The notes below the pieces were generated by a model that searched no databases, had not been told where the DNA came from, and was given only the letters and a program-made list of their open reading frames with translations. A stretch of DNA of 10,828 nt, taken from Octopus sinensis. Taxonomy: Eukaryota. The position numbers were made by a program, and so were the translations under genes. Location of the stretch: positions 1-10,828 of the forward strand of contig NW_021827238.1 in assembly GCF_006345805.1 (NCBI RefSeq), in the 5' to 3' direction. This document shows positions 2,505 to 10,260 of the stretch, piece after piece; the stretch's first letter is position 1; every line of letters starts with the position of its first letter.

Positions 2505-2992
2505 CCGCCATCACTATCACAACAGCATAGCACAATCTCCTCGTGTCACCGTCATCATCGTCATCATCATCATCATCATCATCACCCTCACCTTTAACTT
2601 CATTGTCACAAATCGCCATTATATAAAGGGAAAAAACCCACCACTGACGCCACCATCAGAACTACCACCACCACCACTACCACAACAACAGTCAGCAATC
2701 TTCATTACCACCCCCTCCACTACAGCACACTACCACCAACACCACCACCACCACTAACACCACCAACGTCACCACCACTAACACCAACAAGAGCGACGCT
2801 ACCTGTAATTTCCGACCTCCCACACACATACCCCCGGCCACCACCACCAATTACCACCATCACCACCACCACCATCACCGCCGTCACCACCATTATCACT
2901 ACTACTACCACCACCAACACCACTAGCGCCACTACCTATAATTTCCGCCCCCACCACCCACCATCCACCACCCACCACCACCGCCGCCACCA
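2505..2992. repeat. Cryptic (ACC)n / (ATC)n / (AAC)n trinucleotide simple-sequence region
   Basis: Runs of cac/cat/caa triplets with frequent phase slips; (CAT)n at about 2552-2584. Confidence 0.9.
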
Positions 2993-3062
2993 GTCGTCGA
3001 AGTTTGACAGCGTATGTACTTCAGTAAGGTAACCAATAACATTAAGGCCATATTTGTCTCAC
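2932..3062 (-). CDS. Candidate coding exon, in frame with the 3410-3500 exon: (G)ETNMALMLLVTLLKYIRCQTSTTGGGGGGGWWMVGGGGGNYR*; true 3' end uncertain
   Basis: Strong acceptor TTTTTTTTTCACGACAG| (AG at 3064-3063). The phase fits the upstream phase-1 donor and the joined frame is open to TAG at 2934-2932. No convincing internal donor, and the 3' part runs into simple repeat. Confidence 0.35.
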
Positions 3063-4399: not shown

Positions 4400-4817
4400 C
4401 AAACTTAATCTGTCGACCCTGTTCAACAAACTTACTCTATCGCCCGGTTTAACAAACTTAATCTGTCACCCAGTTAATCAAATTTAATCCGTCACTCAGT
4501 TTAGCGAACTTAATCTGTCACCCAGTTTAATAAATTTAATCTGTCGCCCGATTTAAAAAACTATCTCGGTCGCCCGGTTAACCAAATTTAATCCGTCGCT
4601 CGGTTTAAAAACTTCATCTGTCGCACCGGTTTAACAAACTTAATCTGTCGCCCGGTTAACCAATTTAATCTGTCGCCCGATTTAAAAAACTTAATCTGTC
4701 GCCCGGTTTAACAAACTTAATCTGTCGCCCGGTTAATCAAATTTAATCTGTTACCCGGTTAACCAAATTTAATCTTTCGCCCGGTTTAAAAAACGTAATC
4801 TGTAGTCCGGTTTAACA
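4400..4817. repeat. 26-bp minisatellite, about 16 units, consensus AACAAACTTAATCTGTCGCCCGGTTT
   Basis: TAATC-type anchors at 4406, 4433, 4459, 4485, 4511, 4537, about 4563, 4589, 4614, 4641, 4666, 4692, 4718, 4744, 4770 and 4796. Confidence 0.95.
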
Positions 4818-5059
4818 ATGCCCTCTTGGCAATTGGCTCTCTTTAGCGGAATTCACTACGTTACAAGCTGTAGATCCTAATCTCCAATTGGGGAACATTT
4901 CTCCCATCCAATAGTTTCGGAGGCCCTGTAAAGGATTATGCTCCCATTATTTCCTACTGACTAAGCGATTAAAAAGAACTAGCTAAAATAGATCCGAGGA
5001 AAACAGTCCCTCCAAGAGCACGCTTAAGCCCTCTAGGGCAACAGTTTTGTGTTTCCGCA

Positions 5060-5197
5060 TTTCTCTTGCAGTACCTCAAATTTCTGTTAGAGAACCTTAA
5101 ATTCCTCTTGCAGTACCTCAAATTTCCGTTAGATTACCTCAAATTTCCGTTAGATTACCTCAGATTTCTTCCAAGAGTACCTCAGATTTCTTCCATA
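5060..5197. repeat. 21-bp minisatellite, about 6.5 units
   Basis: Units tttctcttgcagtacctcaaa / tttctgttagagaaccttaaa / ttcctcttgcagtacctcaaa / tttccgttagattacctcaaa / tttccgttagattacctcaga / tttcttccaagagtacctcaga. Confidence 0.9.
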
Positions 5198-5434: not shown

Positions 5435-6165
5435 AGGCGCAGGAGTGGCTGTGGTAAGTAGCTTGCAAACCAACCACATGGTTTCGGGTTCAGTCCCACT
5501 GCGTGGCATCTTGGCCAAGTGTCTTCTGCTATAGCCCCGGGCCGACCAATGACTTGTGAGTGGATTTGGTAGACGGAAACTGAAAGAAGCCTGTCGTTTA
5601 TATGTATATATATATGTGTGTGTGTTTGTGTGTGTGTTTGTCCCCCTAGCATTGCTTGACAATCGATGCTGGTGTGTTTACGTCCCCGTCACTTAGCGGT
5701 TCGGCAAAAGAGACCGATAGAATATGTACTGGGCTTACAAAAGAATAAGTCCCGGGGTCGATTTGCTCGACTAAATGCGGTGCTCCAGCATGGCCGCAGT
5801 CAAATGACACTTGGGCAAGTGTCTTCTGCTATAGCCCCGGGCCGACCAAAGCCTTGTGAGTGGATTTGGTAGACGGAAACTGAAAGAAGCCTGTCGTATA
5901 TATGTGTATATATATATATATATGTATGTATGTGTGTGTGTGTTTGTGTGTCTGTGTTTGTCCCCCTAGCATAGCTTGACAATCGATGCTAGTGTGTTTA
6001 CGTCCCCGTCACTTAGCGGTTCGGCAAAAGAGACCGATAGAATATGTACTGGGCTTACAAAAGAATAAGTCCCGGGGGTCGATTTGCTCGACTAAAGGCG
6101 GTGCTCCAGCATGGCCGCAGTCAAATGACTGAAACAAGTAAAAGAGTAAAAAGAGTAAAGAGAGT
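5435..6165 (+). mobile_element. SINE family A head-to-tail dimer (monomer 1 5435-5808; 5'-truncated monomer 2 5809-6165)
   Basis: tRNA-like head with A box TGGCTGTGG and B box GGTTCAGTCCC (about 5487-5497), internal TA/TG microsatellite and (AAAGAGT)n tail at about 6138-6165. 5810-6129 repeats about 5510-5808 at high identity. Confidence 0.92.
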
Positions 6166-6600: not shown

Positions 6601-6770
6601 AGGCGTGTGTATGATTGTGTAGTAAGAAACTCGCTTTGCAGTCACGTGGTTTCGTCTTCAAGTGTCACTGCGCGGCACCTTGGGCAAGTGTCTTCAACTA
6701 CCCCCCCCCCGGCGACCAATGCCTTGTGAAGGAATTTGGTAGGGGGAAACTGACTGGAAGCCCATCGTAT
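6601..6770 (+). mobile_element. SINE family A, diverged 5' half
   Basis: cactgcgcggcaccttgggcaagtgtcttc ... gaccaatgccttgtg..ggaatttggtagggggaaactga..ggaagccc matches 5497-5592. Confidence 0.85.
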
Positions 6771-6831: not shown

Positions 6832-7088
6832 GGAGGCGCAATGGCTCACTGGTTAGGGCAGCGGACTCGCGGTCGTAGGATCGCGGTTTCGATTCCCAGA
6901 ACGGGCGTTGTGAAAACACCTTAAAGCTGCAGGAGGCTCCGGCAGGGGGTGGTGATCCCTGGTGTACTCTTTCACCACTCTTTCTTTCACTCTTTCTTCT
7001 GTTGGCCTGCACGAAGGCTAAAAACAATGCGAAGTGCATTGTGATCAGCGATGTGTAACAACATCTGATGGTCTGGTCGGTCACGTGA
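6832..7088 (+). mobile_element. SINE family C, copy 2 (intact tRNA-like head, alternative 3' tail)
   Basis: GGAGGCGCAATGGCTCACTGGTTAG A-box region and GGTTTCGATTCCC B box. Body matches 193-370; the tail at 7000-7088 differs from copy 1. Inserted directly after (TG)n. Confidence 0.85.
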
Positions 7089-7093
7089 TATAT

Positions 7094-7129
<36 letters not shown>

Positions 7130-7316
7130 GGGAGGGTTTATGAAGAAAACAAAAGACGAAGACAGGTGGTGTACAAAACAAACAGATGTATTAGTATAAC
7201 GCTCAGGAATAGAAAAAGTCTTTTACGTTTCGAGCCTACGCTCTTCTACAGAAAGGGACACAGAAAAAAACAAGGAGAGAAAAAATGTTGTAGTGGCTAA
7301 CGATCTGTCATGGGAC
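7130..7316 (-). mobile_element. Short element embedded in (TA)n, probably a Penelope-like-element / retrozyme-type terminal fragment
   Basis: Complex sequence flanked by (TA)n on both sides (7089-7129, 7317-7338) and carrying a minimal hammerhead-like motif. The family assignment is inferred from that motif. Confidence 0.5.
7218..7259 (-). ncRNA. Minimal type I hammerhead ribozyme-like motif with variant core
   Basis: Minus strand GUCCCUUU-CUGUAGA-A-GAGC-GUAG-GCUC-GAAA-CG-UA-AAAGAC. Stem I CUUU/AAAG, extendable GUC/GAC across a bulge; stem II GAGC/GCUC; palindromic loopless stem III ACGU. One core deviation (A6 to U). Confidence 0.6.
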
Positions 7317-7341
7317 TATATATATATAATATATATAATCT

Positions 7342-7374: not shown

Positions 7375-7570
7375 TTGTGTGTGTGTGTGTGTATGTATGG
7401 TATGTATGTATGAATGTAGTATGTATTGTATGTATGTATGTATGTATGTATGTATGTATGCTGTATGTATGTATGTATGTATGTATGATGTATGTATGTA
7501 TGTATTATGTACGTGCGTATGCATGTATGTATGTATGTATGTATGTGTATGTATGTATGTATGTGTGTGT
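7343..7570. repeat. (TG)n and (TATG)n microsatellite
   Basis: Direct reading of the sequence. Confidence 0.95.
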
Positions 7571-7807: not shown

Positions 7808-8225
7808 AAGGCGGGGAGCTGGCAGAAACGTTAGCACGCAGGGCGAAATGCTTAGCGGTATTTCGTCTGCCGCTACGTTCTGAGTTCAAATTCCGCCGAG
7901 GTCGACTTTGCCTTTCATCCTTTCGGGGGTCGATAAATTAAGTACTAGTTACGCACTGGGGTCGATGTAATCGACTCAATCCGTTTGTCTGTCCTTGTTT
8001 GTCCTCTCTGTGTTTAGCCCCTTGTGGGTAGTAAAGAAATAAGTATTTCGTCTGCCGTTACGTTCTGAGTTCAAATTCCGCTGAGTTCGACTTTGCCTTT
8101 CATCCTTTCGGGGTCGATAAATTAAGTACCAGTTACGCACTGGGGTCGATGTAATCGACTCAATCCGTTTGTCTGTCCTTGTTTGTCCTCTCTGTGTTTA
8201 GCCCCTTGTGGGTAATAAAGAAATA
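7808..8225 (+). mobile_element. SINE family B homodimer (7808-8042 full; 8043-8225 5'-truncated) with 16-bp TSD
   Basis: tRNA-like head (TGGCAGAAACG; GAGTTCAAATTCC) and central CCTTTCATCCTTTCGGGGTCGATAAATTAAGTAC resembling the Deu/Nin SINE core as I recall it. Perfect TSD GATAATGGGGTAGCGA at 7792-7807 and 8226-8241. Confidence 0.95.
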
Positions 8226-8872: not shown

Positions 8873-9260
8873 TTAACATTTTATCATCCAAACCGACCAT
8901 ATCTGGCCGAACTGTCCTACTTGTTTTATGCTCAAACTGGCCAGATCCGGCGTGTCACACATACCCTACAACGTCCTTCTAAAAATAAGCAATCTCATTG
9001 TGAAAATCCCAAGCTACAGGATAATGCATGATTAATTGAAAACAATCCTTACTACTATCGGCACAAAGCCTGAAATTTGGGGGGAGGAGGGCCAGTGGAT
9101 TAGATCAACCCCAGTACGCAACTGGTACTTAATTTATTGATCTACGAAAGGCTGAAAGGCAAAGTCGAACTCGGTGGGATTTGAACTCTGATTAATTGAA
9201 AATGATGTGAATAAATAAGCATTACTTTTGACAGAGTAATTATGAATGCTAAAGAGTTTA
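8873..9260. mobile_element. Degenerate TTAA-type (piggyBac-like) MITE interrupted by a SINE
   Basis: Left end TTAA-CATTTTATCATC versus reverse-complemented right end TAAA-CTCTTTAGCATT (8/12 TIR match). Non-coding, AT-rich, and similar to an octopus MITE I recall (unverified). Confidence 0.5.
9047..9188 (-). mobile_element. 5'-truncated SINE family B (second tail type), inverted, with 18-bp TSD
   Basis: Reverse complement GAGTTCAAATCCCACCGAGTTCGACTTTGCCTTTCAGCCTTTCG...AATTAAGTACCAGTTGCGTACTGGGG...CCCCAAATTTCAGGCTTTGTGCC matches about 10049-10176. TSD 9029-9046 and 9189-9206 (16/18). Confidence 0.9.
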
Positions 9261-9757: not shown

Positions 9758-10188
9758 AAGGCGGCGAGCTGGCAGAAACGTTAGCACGCCGGGCGAAATG
9801 CTAAGCAGTATTTCATCTGCCGTTACGTTCTGAGTTCAAATTCCGCCGAGGTCGACTTTGCTTTTCATCCTTTCGGGGTCGATTAAATAAGTACCAGTTA
9901 CGCACTGGAGTCGATGTAATCGACTTAATCCGTTTGTCCGTCCTTGTTTGTCCCCCCTGTGTTTAATCCCTTGGGGGCAATAAAGAAATAAGAAACTTTA
10001 GCGCGCCGAGCGAAATGTTTAGAGGTATTTCGTCTGTCCTTGTGTTCTGAGTTCAAATTCCACCGAGGTCGACTTCACCTTTCATCCTTTCGGGGTAGAT
10101 GAATTAAGTACCAGTTGCGTACTGGGGTCGATGTAATCGACCGGCTCCTTCCCCCAAAATTTTGGGCCTTGTGCCTAGAGTGGAATAG
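9758..10188 (+). mobile_element. SINE family B heterodimer (9758-9990 tail type 1; 9991-10188 tail type 2)
   Basis: Monomer 1 matches 7808-8042. Monomer 2 restarts at AGAAAC.TTAGC and ends in the CCCCAAAATTTTGGGCCTTGTGCC tail. Probable TSD AACGTAAAAAGACGT (9742-9756) / AATGTAAGAAGACGT (10189-10203), 13/15. Confidence 0.9.
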
Positions 10189-10260
10189 AATGTAAGAAGA
10201 CGTAAATGGGGTGAGTGGGGGGCGCCAGCACTTGCTTGTGTCTACCCGTATCTATGCATG

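What the first reader, a model, noticed from the sequence alone, without database searches (positions are those of the whole stretch)
7218..7259. Minimal hammerhead-ribozyme-like motif with a variant catalytic core in a TA-embedded element
Seen (minus strand): stem I CUUU/AAAG (plus GUC/GAC), core CUGUAGA, one extra A, stem II GAGC-GUAG-GCUC, GAAA, loopless palindromic stem III ACGU, and cleavage triplet GUA with the predicted cut between 7224 and 7223. Established: Penelope-like elements and retrozymes carry minimal type I hammerheads whose short palindromic stem III favours dimeric cleavage, and an extra A after A9 is tolerated in a natural viroid hammerhead. The canonical core is CUGANGA; here position 6 is U. 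Inference: either a dead copy, or a family-wide core variant with altered or trans/dimer-dependent activity. If the candidate gene is real, it lies sense within an intron.
Basis: partly seen in the sequence, partly recalled or inferred. Interest (0 to 1): 0.75.

Follow-up and report, generated by a model that had tools for sequence, protein, structure and literature searches.

The report
Decayed Penelope-type minimal hammerhead remnant
The sequence does look like the stripped-down hammerhead ribozyme carried by Penelope-like retrotransposons, but it is a lone copy with a change at an essential core base, so it is most likely an ordinary dead transposon relic, not a new ribozyme variant.

Summary
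The one error is that the two proposed stem I pairings both use G7220, so only one can form. In practice stem I is 4 bp, three of them A-U.

The match is unlikely to be chance for a single window. My min-HHR descriptor allowing at most one core mismatch hits only this site, none of 400 shuffles, and 1 site in 60 Mb of random sequence (about 3.6e-4 per window). That rate would still give tens of chance hits in a Gb-sized genome.

A metagenome scan with core positions 6 and 7 left free found 82 loci. About 77-79 of them form one min-HHR family with the same bulged A, GAGC/GCUC helix II and GAAACGU. One member lies 214 nt downstream of a PLE-type endonuclease ORF. Position 6 is A in every family member and never U.

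In the window there is no second copy, no tandem repeat and no RT or endonuclease. The U6 change also favours a closed, non-catalytic hairpin.

Rfam finds nothing, but it also misses the canonical-core min-HHRs, so that result says little.

Most likely this is a decayed, inactive, solo PLE-derived min-HHR sitting in a (TA)n run. Host-genome copies could not be reached, so a family-wide U6 variant is not excluded, only unlikely.

The parts
7218..7259 (-).
   Evidence: Read directly. It is the only descriptor hit with <=1 or <=2 core mismatches in the window.
7252..7255 (-). Helix I, 5' strand (CUUU)
   Evidence: Pairs with 7223-7220 (AAAG): 4 bp, three of them A-U. Ensemble pair probability is 0.16-0.19.
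7245..7251 (-). Core box CUGUAGA (C3-A9). Base 7248 is U at position 6, where all hammerhead consensus cores have A.
   Evidence: Position 6 is A in 77/77 family relatives. Natural A6C is known to be crippled in Mg2+ (PMC7151607).
7244..7244 (-). Unpaired A between A9 and G10.1
   Evidence: The same bulged A occurs in 75/77 relatives. The feature is described for PLE min-HHRs (PMC4209133).
7232..7243 (-). Helix II hairpin GAGC-GUAG-GCUC (G10.1-C11.1 closing pair)
   Evidence: Pair probability is about 1.0. The stem letters are identical to the metagenome family.
7224..7231 (-). GAAA box (G12-A15.1), the loopless palindrome ACGU (15.1-16.1) and A17. The predicted scissile bond lies between 7224 and 7223.
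   Evidence: The self-duplex of the ACGU palindrome is only about -3.7 kcal/mol.
7220..7223 (-). Helix I, 3' strand (AAAG)
7130..7316 (-). 187-nt unique segment carrying the motif. It is a possible 5'-truncated PLE 3' end, with the motif 57 nt from its 5' edge and the cut site 94 nt from its 3' edge.
   Evidence: No paralogue in the window. The boundaries are inferred only from the flanking TA runs. In the metagenome family the element extends 60-125 nt beyond the HHR.
7088..7129 (.). (TA)n run on the low-coordinate side; it is also the tail of the SINE-like repeat at about 6836-7087
   Evidence: TRF; sequence.
7317..7339 (.). (TA)n run on the high-coordinate side, in phase with the other run; it is followed by a (TG)n/(TGTA)n microsatellite
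   Evidence: TRF; sequence.

Best explanation
This is a solitary, mutationally decayed minimal type I hammerhead of the kind carried near the 3' end or in the pseudo-LTR of Penelope-like retroelements. Most likely a 5'-truncated PLE copy or PLE-derived non-autonomous fragment (about 7130-7316, minus-strand sense) inserted into a (TA)n microsatellite. It later acquired an A-to-U change at core position 6. When the parent element was intact and transcribed as a tandem or multimeric RNA, two such motifs could pair through the ACGU palindrome to build a shared helix III and cut after A17. This copy has no partner nearby and a weak 4-bp helix I. Its U6 both removes an essential core adenine and helps close the core into a plain hairpin, so it is expected to be catalytically dead and without function. 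Shown here: the motif, its statistics, its letter-level match to a real PLE-linked family, and the absence of partners or ORFs in the window. Inferred: PLE origin of this particular copy, insertion into the TA run, and inactivity.
For: (1) Architecture. All min-HHR hallmarks except A6 are present (against PMC4209133). (2) Chance. The descriptor hits only this site in the window, 0/400 shuffles and 1 hit in 60 Mb of random sequence. Among the 8 random hits at <=2 mismatches, only 1 also had both the bulge and G10.1-C11.1. (3) Relatives. The pattern CTGNNGANGAGCNNNNGCTCGAAACGT gave 82 metagenome loci. Of these, 77-79 are one family, CUGACGA-A-GAGC-UAAC-GCUC-GAAA-CG-UC, with a 3-bp helix I. The contigs are metazoan, for example a TRIM/NHL gene in L012. 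L005 has an ORF ending in CX4CX2C plus a GIY-YIG-like block 214 nt upstream of its HHR on the same strand; I identified that block by eye. (4) Position 6 is A in 77/77 family members, while free positions vary by 2.6-9.1%. This is consistent with constraint on A6. (5) Changes at position 6 give low activity. The natural A6C variant is >10,000-fold slower in 0.3 mM Mg2+ (PMC7151607; PMC3088659). (6) With U6, the MFE (-8.6 kcal/mol) pairs U6-A15.1, G5-C15.2 and U4-G16.2. With A at position 6, the hammerhead-compatible fold (-7.4) is the MFE. (7) Context. The TA runs on both sides are in phase, and (TA)n is a reported preferred target of some PLE clades (PMC8557442). Only 3.3% of the window lies in gaps of <=200 nt between TA runs. 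(8) If the host is an octopus, as the SINEs suggest to me from memory, its genome had a PLE burst at JC distance 0.2 (PMC13282606). At that divergence, copies with exactly one change in 10 core bases should outnumber intact ones.
Against: No other copy of the 187-nt segment or the motif is available, so homology to a PLE is not demonstrated for this locus. The flanks show no similarity to the metagenome family. The window contains no RT or GIY-YIG remnant in the 6 long non-SINE ORF segments I tested, and no second motif. The search pattern was derived from the candidate, so the shared 20 letters are partly by construction; only the existence and size of the family are independent evidence. The metagenome family is not TA-embedded (0/70), and the low-side TA run may simply be a SINE tail. 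Host identity was not verified with any tool.
Confidence: 0.62

Rival explanations
1. Chance resemblance. An A/G/U-rich stretch with a 4-bp GC hairpin happens to match a permissive one-mismatch hammerhead descriptor, and the sequence has never been a ribozyme.
For: The random expectation is about 3.6e-4 per window, which means about 40-90 sites per 2.7-Gb genome (and my analytic estimate of about 1.6e-4). The first-stage reader scanned an unknown number of windows and motif types. Helix I is only 4 bp and A-U rich, with pair probability <0.2. The fold z-score is +0.67. There is no Rfam hit, no second copy, and no PLE protein remnant in the segments tested.
Against: The candidate also has the bulged nucleotide, G10.1-C11.1 and the CG palindrome, which cut the chance rate roughly tenfold. 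It matches a genuine 77-79-member family in 20 of 20 specified letters. It lies between in-phase TA runs. In PLE-rich genomes, real decayed min-HHRs number in the thousands (PMC4209133, PMC7229834), far above the chance count.
Confidence: 0.27
2. A functional core variant. U6 is the consensus of a host-specific min-HHR family that cleaves as a dimer, in trans, with a cofactor, or with a different metal preference, by analogy with natural A6C hammerheads that prefer Mn2+.
For: Natural variation at position 6 exists and retains activity in Mn2+ (PMC7151607; PMC3088659). PLE min-HHRs are highly variable and poorly active in vitro even with canonical cores. All other core and architectural features are intact.
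Against: U6 occurs in 0 of 82 hits when positions 6 and 7 were left free. There is a single copy with no partner in 10.8 kb. Min-HHRs lack the loop-loop contacts thought to compensate for core defects (PMC3088659). U6 stabilises a competing closed hairpin. A ~20%-diverged relic explains one core change without invoking selection.
Confidence: 0.06
3. Part of a non-LTR retrozyme, a tandemly repeated non-autonomous element that produces circular RNA.
For: Animal retrozymes carry type I hammerheads and are related to PLE pseudo-LTRs (PMC7229834; bioRxiv 10.64898/2026.07.22.740005).
Against: There is no tandem repeat of 170-400 bp at this site and no second hammerhead. Retrozyme hammerheads are canonical, with loop 1-loop 2 contacts, and this motif has none.
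Confidence: 0.03

Closest known systems
Minimal hammerhead ribozymes (min-HHR) of metazoan Penelope-like elements (Cervera & de la Pena 2014, PMC4209133)
   Same: Type I topology. Short helix I. An unpaired nucleotide between A9 and G10.1. A G10.1-C11.1 pair. GAAA followed by a palindromic 15.2/16.2 dinucleotide with no loop 3, which implies dimer-dependent formation of helix III. A solo genomic copy, as for most reported motifs. The bulge, helix II and helix III letters are identical to a 77-79-copy PLE-linked family found here.
   Different: Core position 6 is U instead of the invariant A. No partner copy, pseudo-LTR or RT/EN ORF was seen within 10.8 kb. Membership of a consensus family in the host genome could not be shown.
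Natural A6C hammerhead of bacteriophage Bcep176 (Perreault et al. 2011, PMC3088659; Naghdi et al. 2020, PMC7151607)
   Same: A natural hammerhead-like sequence with a non-A base at core position 6.
   Different: That ribozyme has stable helices, was shown to cleave, and carries C rather than U. The candidate here is a minimal, loopless motif with no activity data.
Non-LTR retrozymes of animals (de la Pena et al. 2020, PMC7229834)
   Same: Type I hammerhead with a short helix III that works in multimeric transcripts, and an evolutionary link to PLEs.
   Different: Retrozymes are tandem arrays of 170-400-bp units with canonical hammerheads and loop-loop contacts. This is a single minimal motif.
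CChMVd (+) hammerhead with an extra nucleotide after A9 (De la Pena & Flores 2001, as cited in PMC4209133)
   Same: An extra unpaired nucleotide between A9 and G10.1.
   Different: It is a viroid type III ribozyme with a canonical core and stable helices.

Membership tests
PLE minimal hammerhead (min-HHR) | Type I order: helix I 5' strand, CUGANGA, helix II hairpin, GAAA, minimal helix III, U-H, helix I 3' strand | tested here: met
   Direct reading and a descriptor hit.
PLE minimal hammerhead (min-HHR) | All conserved core nucleotides present (C3 U4 G5 A6 G8 A9 G12 A13 A14 A15.1 U16.1, H17) | tested here: not met
   Position 6 (7248) is U; the other 10 bases and H17 = A are present. The only documented core exception in PLEs is the U3-A8 covariation.
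PLE minimal hammerhead (min-HHR) | Unpaired nucleotide between A9 and G10.1 | tested here: met
   A7244; the same base occurs in 75/77 relatives.
PLE minimal hammerhead (min-HHR) | G10.1-C11.1 closing pair of helix II | tested here: met
   G7243-C7232.
PLE minimal hammerhead (min-HHR) | Palindromic 15.2/16.2 with no loop 3 (or a palindromic one), allowing a dimeric helix III | tested here: met
   A-CG-U at 7228-7225; the self-duplex is about -3.7 kcal/mol.
PLE minimal hammerhead (min-HHR) | Short helix I (2-5 bp reported) | tested here: met
   4 bp, CUUU/AAAG; the metagenome family has 3 bp.
PLE minimal hammerhead (min-HHR) | Belongs to a within-genome consensus family showing covariation | not testable with these tools
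   The host genome is not in any searchable collection. Protein and contig look-ups were empty. There is no copy elsewhere in the window.
PLE minimal hammerhead (min-HHR) | Lies in a pseudo-LTR next to an RT/GIY-YIG ORF, or has a second motif nearby (<50 kb) | tested here: not met
   No second motif in the 10.8-kb window even at <=2 mismatches. No Pfam hit in 6 long non-SINE ORF segments. No ORF >170 aa other than low-complexity ones. The test covers only 10.8 kb, and most reported motifs are solo copies.
PLE minimal hammerhead (min-HHR) | Self-cleavage, at least as a dimer | not testable with these tools
   Needs in vitro transcription and cleavage assays.
Canonical hammerhead ribozyme (Rfam Hammerhead_1/3/II/HH9/HH10) | Score at or above the family gathering threshold | tested here: not met
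   No hit at gathering score or at E<=10. The control shows the models also miss canonical-core min-HHRs, so this is weak evidence.
Non-LTR retrozyme | Tandem array of 170-400-bp units, each with a type I hammerhead with loop 1-loop 2 contacts | tested here: not met
   TRF shows no such array around 7130-7316; there is only a single motif.

The most novel reading that the evidence does not exclude
U6 is not a private mutation but the consensus of a host-specific (probably cephalopod) PLE min-HHR lineage. Such a lineage would retain dimer- or cofactor-dependent cleavage with an altered metal requirement, making it the first natural U6 hammerhead core and a eukaryotic parallel to the Mn2+-preferring A6C variant.
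Probability: 0.05. Interest if true: 0.55.

Novelty: new member of a known kind. Interest (0 to 1): 0.2.

Why it matters
As a dead PLE hammerhead relic, it matters only as annotation. It flags a small PLE-derived fragment in a repeat-dense region and adds one more example of min-HHR decay.

It would matter more if a census of the host genome showed U6 to be a family consensus. That would widen the known sequence space of the hammerhead core and bear on how the barely active min-HHRs work in vivo.

One practical point from this work is that Rfam's hammerhead models do not detect PLE min-HHRs at all. Rfam-based scans therefore undercount them.

Tried and rejected
- **Rfam scans** at gathering score and at E<=10 on 10.8 kb, 701 nt and 91 nt gave no hammerhead. 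The control shows this negative result is uninformative.
- **Copies within the window:** a 22-mer search with up to 3 mismatches and blastn of the 187-nt segment found none.
- **Host-genome copies through proteins:** the 44-aa ORF over the motif and a 128-aa SINE-derived ORF returned no homologues. Four exact-protein contig look-ups found nothing on record.
- **Literature string searches** for the motif and for the SINE sequences gave 0 papers. No supplements are held for the two key PLE papers.
- **Viral-contig scan** with the degenerate pattern gave 0 hits.
I tested stop-free segments instead and found no RT or GIY-YIG. Pfam also failed to recognise the PLE-like endonuclease tail in L005, so that identification rests on my reading of the motifs.
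- **Similarity between the window and the 82 metagenome loci:** none.
- **TA-embedding of the metagenome family:** 0 of 70 copies, so a TA target preference is not a general property of that family.
- **tRNA or B-box reading of the plus strand** (GTTTCGAGCC): rejected, because it forms no T-arm and ARAGORN finds no tRNA in the window.
- **Alternative registers** that would restore CUGANGA: none exists.
- **Covariance model from the metagenome family:** not built, because the family was collected with a pattern taken from the candidate and the score would be circular.
- **Reaching octopus PLEs through the L005 endonuclease:** not pursued, because the hit lists carry no taxonomy and the chance of landing in the right family was very low.

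Full report
**What is in the sequence**

The window is eukaryotic and dominated by microsatellites and SINE-like repeats. There is no convincing coding ORF and no tRNA. The repeats look to me like octopus SINEs, but that is from memory and no tool confirmed it.

On the minus strand, 7259..7218 reads GUCCCUUU-CUGUAGA-A-GAGC-GUAG-GCUC-GAAA-CG-U-A|AAAGAC.

One detail is wrong. CUUU/AAAG and GUC/GAC both use G7220, so they are alternatives, not additions. The 4-bp version gives a hammerhead-compatible fold of -7.4 kcal/mol, and the 3+3-bp version gives -6.3.

**Is it more than chance?**

I wrote a descriptor modelled on the published min-HHR descriptor. It requires helix I of at least 4 bp, CUGANGA, 0-1 extra nucleotide, helix II of at least 4 bp with a 3-8-nt loop, GAAA, a Watson-Crick palindromic 15.2/16.2, then U and H.

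- The window has no perfect hit. With one or two mismatches allowed in the ten fixed core bases, it has exactly one hit, which is this site.
- None of 400 dinucleotide shuffles gave a hit.
- Sixty megabases of first-order Markov sequence gave 0 perfect hits, 1 one-mismatch hit and 8 two-mismatch hits.
- That is about 3.6e-4 per window, in line with my analytic estimate of about 1.6e-4.
- The same rate predicts tens of chance sites in a genome of 2-3 Gb. The motif alone is therefore significant for this window but not for a genome-wide scan.

**Rfam is silent, but uninformative**

No hammerhead model matched at gathering score or at E<=10 in 701-nt and 91-nt slices. As a control I scanned six metagenome loci that carry the same architecture with a canonical core. 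Rfam missed all of them. Its models do not cover loopless minimal hammerheads.

**Related sequences**

I scanned public metagenome contigs with CTGNNGANGAGCNNNNGCTCGAAACGT, leaving positions 6 and 7, the bulge and loop 2 free. About two chance hits were expected, by my own estimate from the 20 specified bases. The scan returned 82 loci.

- Three hits lie on GC-rich, bacterial-looking contigs with G at position 6 and look like chance.
- The other 77-79 form one family..GCU-CUGACGA-A-GAGC-UAAC-GCUC-GAAA-CG-UC-AGC.., with conserved 3' flanks of 60-125 nt and frequent inverted partners.
- The contigs are metazoan. L012, for example, carries a TRIM/B-box/NHL gene. Most come from a few sample series that I take to be coral-associated.
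- In L005 the hammerhead lies 214 nt downstream, on the same strand, of an ORF ending ...GTFKCARKRCNTCPF...FTCTSANVIY...IGETGRRLGDRFREHL. I read this as the CX2-5CxxC linker plus GIY-YIG endonuclease of a Penelope-like element, as described in PMC8557442. Pfam did not call it.

A bona fide PLE-linked min-HHR family therefore exists that shares the candidate's bulged A, helix II letters and GAAACGU. The pattern came from the candidate, so the letter identity is partly by construction. The existence and size of the family are the independent evidence.

**Position 6**

Within that family, free positions vary. Non-consensus frequencies are 9.1% at position 7, 2.6% at the bulge, 2.6-5.2% in loop 2 and 1.3-7.8% in the near flanks. 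Position 6 is A in 77 of 77 copies. That fits constraint on A6, but the evidence is modest, with P roughly 0.03 at about 4.5% per-site variation.

The literature agrees that changes at position 6 are crippling.

- The natural A6C hammerhead of phage Bcep176 is slow in Mg2+.
- An A6C mutant of a fast ribozyme is more than 10,000-fold slower in 0.3 mM Mg2+, although nearly normal in Mn2+ (PMC7151607; PMC3088659).
- I found no report of a natural U6 core.
- PLE min-HHRs are barely active in vitro even with canonical cores, and only as dimers (PMC4209133).

Folding adds a further point. With U6, the minimum-energy structure (-8.6 kcal/mol) closes the core by pairing U6-A15.1, G5-C15.2 and U4-G16.2. 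With A at position 6, the hammerhead-compatible fold is the minimum. Helix II is solid, with pair probability near 1.0. Helix I is not, at 0.16-0.19.

**Context**

The motif sits in a 187-nt unique segment (7130-7316) between two (TA)n runs that are in phase with each other. The low-side run also serves as the tail of a SINE-like repeat at about 6836-7087. (TA)n is a reported preferred target for some PLE clades (PMC8557442). Only 3.3% of the window lies in gaps of 200 nt or less between TA runs. The metagenome family, however, is not TA-embedded (0/70), so this is supportive and not diagnostic.

The cut site is 94 nt from the 3' edge of the segment, in the range seen for the metagenome family. 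The segment has no terminal inverted repeats by my reading, and no paralogue in the window. The window holds no second motif and no tandem array at the site. None of the long non-SINE ORF segments I tested hit RT or GIY-YIG in Pfam.

**Interpretation**

The best reading is a decayed, solitary PLE-type minimal hammerhead. It would be the 3' remnant of a 5'-truncated Penelope-like element or a derivative that landed in a TA microsatellite and later lost A6.

If the host is an octopus, this is what one would expect. O. vulgaris had a PLE expansion dated at Jukes-Cantor distance 0.2 (PMC13282606). At that divergence, copies with exactly one change in ten core bases should be about 2.5 times as common as intact ones. 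PLE-rich genomes carry thousands of min-HHRs, far more than the tens expected by chance.

I put this reading at about 0.62, pure chance at about 0.27, a functional U6 variant at about 0.06 and a retrozyme at about 0.03.

**What could not be done**

The decisive test is a census of copies in the host genome, and it was out of reach. The searchable DNA collections hold no cephalopod genome. Two protein searches and four exact-protein look-ups with window ORFs returned nothing. Literature string searches were empty. The claim that the motif lies sense within an intron could not be assessed because no gene was identified.

**Verdict**

The more exciting half of the interpretation, a family-wide core variant, has no support. 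This is an ordinary relic of a known kind of element.

Noticed in passing
window 4400-4818: A 26-nt tandem array of about 16 copies at 79% match, with consensus CAAACTTAATCTGTCGCCCGGTTTAA. It is a minisatellite of unknown origin.
   Followed up: no
window 5059-5195: A 21-22-nt tandem array of about 6 copies, with consensus ATTTCTCTTAGAGTACCTCAA.
   Followed up: no
window 7858-8225, 9807-9990, 10024-10207; inverted copy 9094-9191: A 184-nt SINE-like unit is present as a 96%-identical tandem pair plus further direct and inverted copies. The sequence looks to me like an octopus SINE, but no tool confirmed this.
   Followed up: partly
window 6836-7087; also 70-140, 5471-5541, 6640-6710; 5510-5757 vs 5810-6077: Two more SINE-like families, one with a tRNA-like head (GGCGCAATGGCTCACTGGTTAG...GGTTTCGATTCCC), and a 91-95% identical local duplication spaced about 300-320 nt apart. 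ARAGORN calls no tRNA.
   Followed up: partly
window 7492-7561 and other TG/TA/TGTA microsatellites: Rfam mir-297, mir-1277 and mir-466-type matches far below gathering score. These are hairpins formed by microsatellites, not miRNA genes.
   Followed up: yes
window 2550-3000: A strongly C/A-rich (minus strand G/T-rich) low-complexity block with a (TCA)11 run at 2552-2584 and CCA/ACC repeats. It gives long stop-free frames but only low-complexity peptides.
   Followed up: no
L058 969-1098 (metagenome locus OMLO01234164.1); also L004 1226-1332: Inverted pairs of min-HHR-bearing PLE ends form long hairpins. These score E = 5e-16 (76 bits, below the gathering score of 105) against the Rfam plant miRNA family MIR4374, and similarly against MIR9486. 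They are a likely source of false miRNA annotations.
   Followed up: no
L001-L082 (metagenome loci, series Ga0126336/7, Ga00998xx, OMLO01): A 77-79-copy min-HHR family, CUGACGA-A-GAGC-UAAC-GCUC-GAAACGUC, with a 3-bp helix I, in metazoan host DNA inside metagenomes. Rfam hammerhead models detect none of the six copies tested.
   Followed up: partly
L017 1662-1688 (MDSQ01052127.1): A separate min-HHR, CUGAAGA-A-GAGC-GUUG-GCUC-GAAACGUC. Its loop 2 differs from the candidate's GUAG by one base, but its flanks are unrelated.
   Followed up: partly
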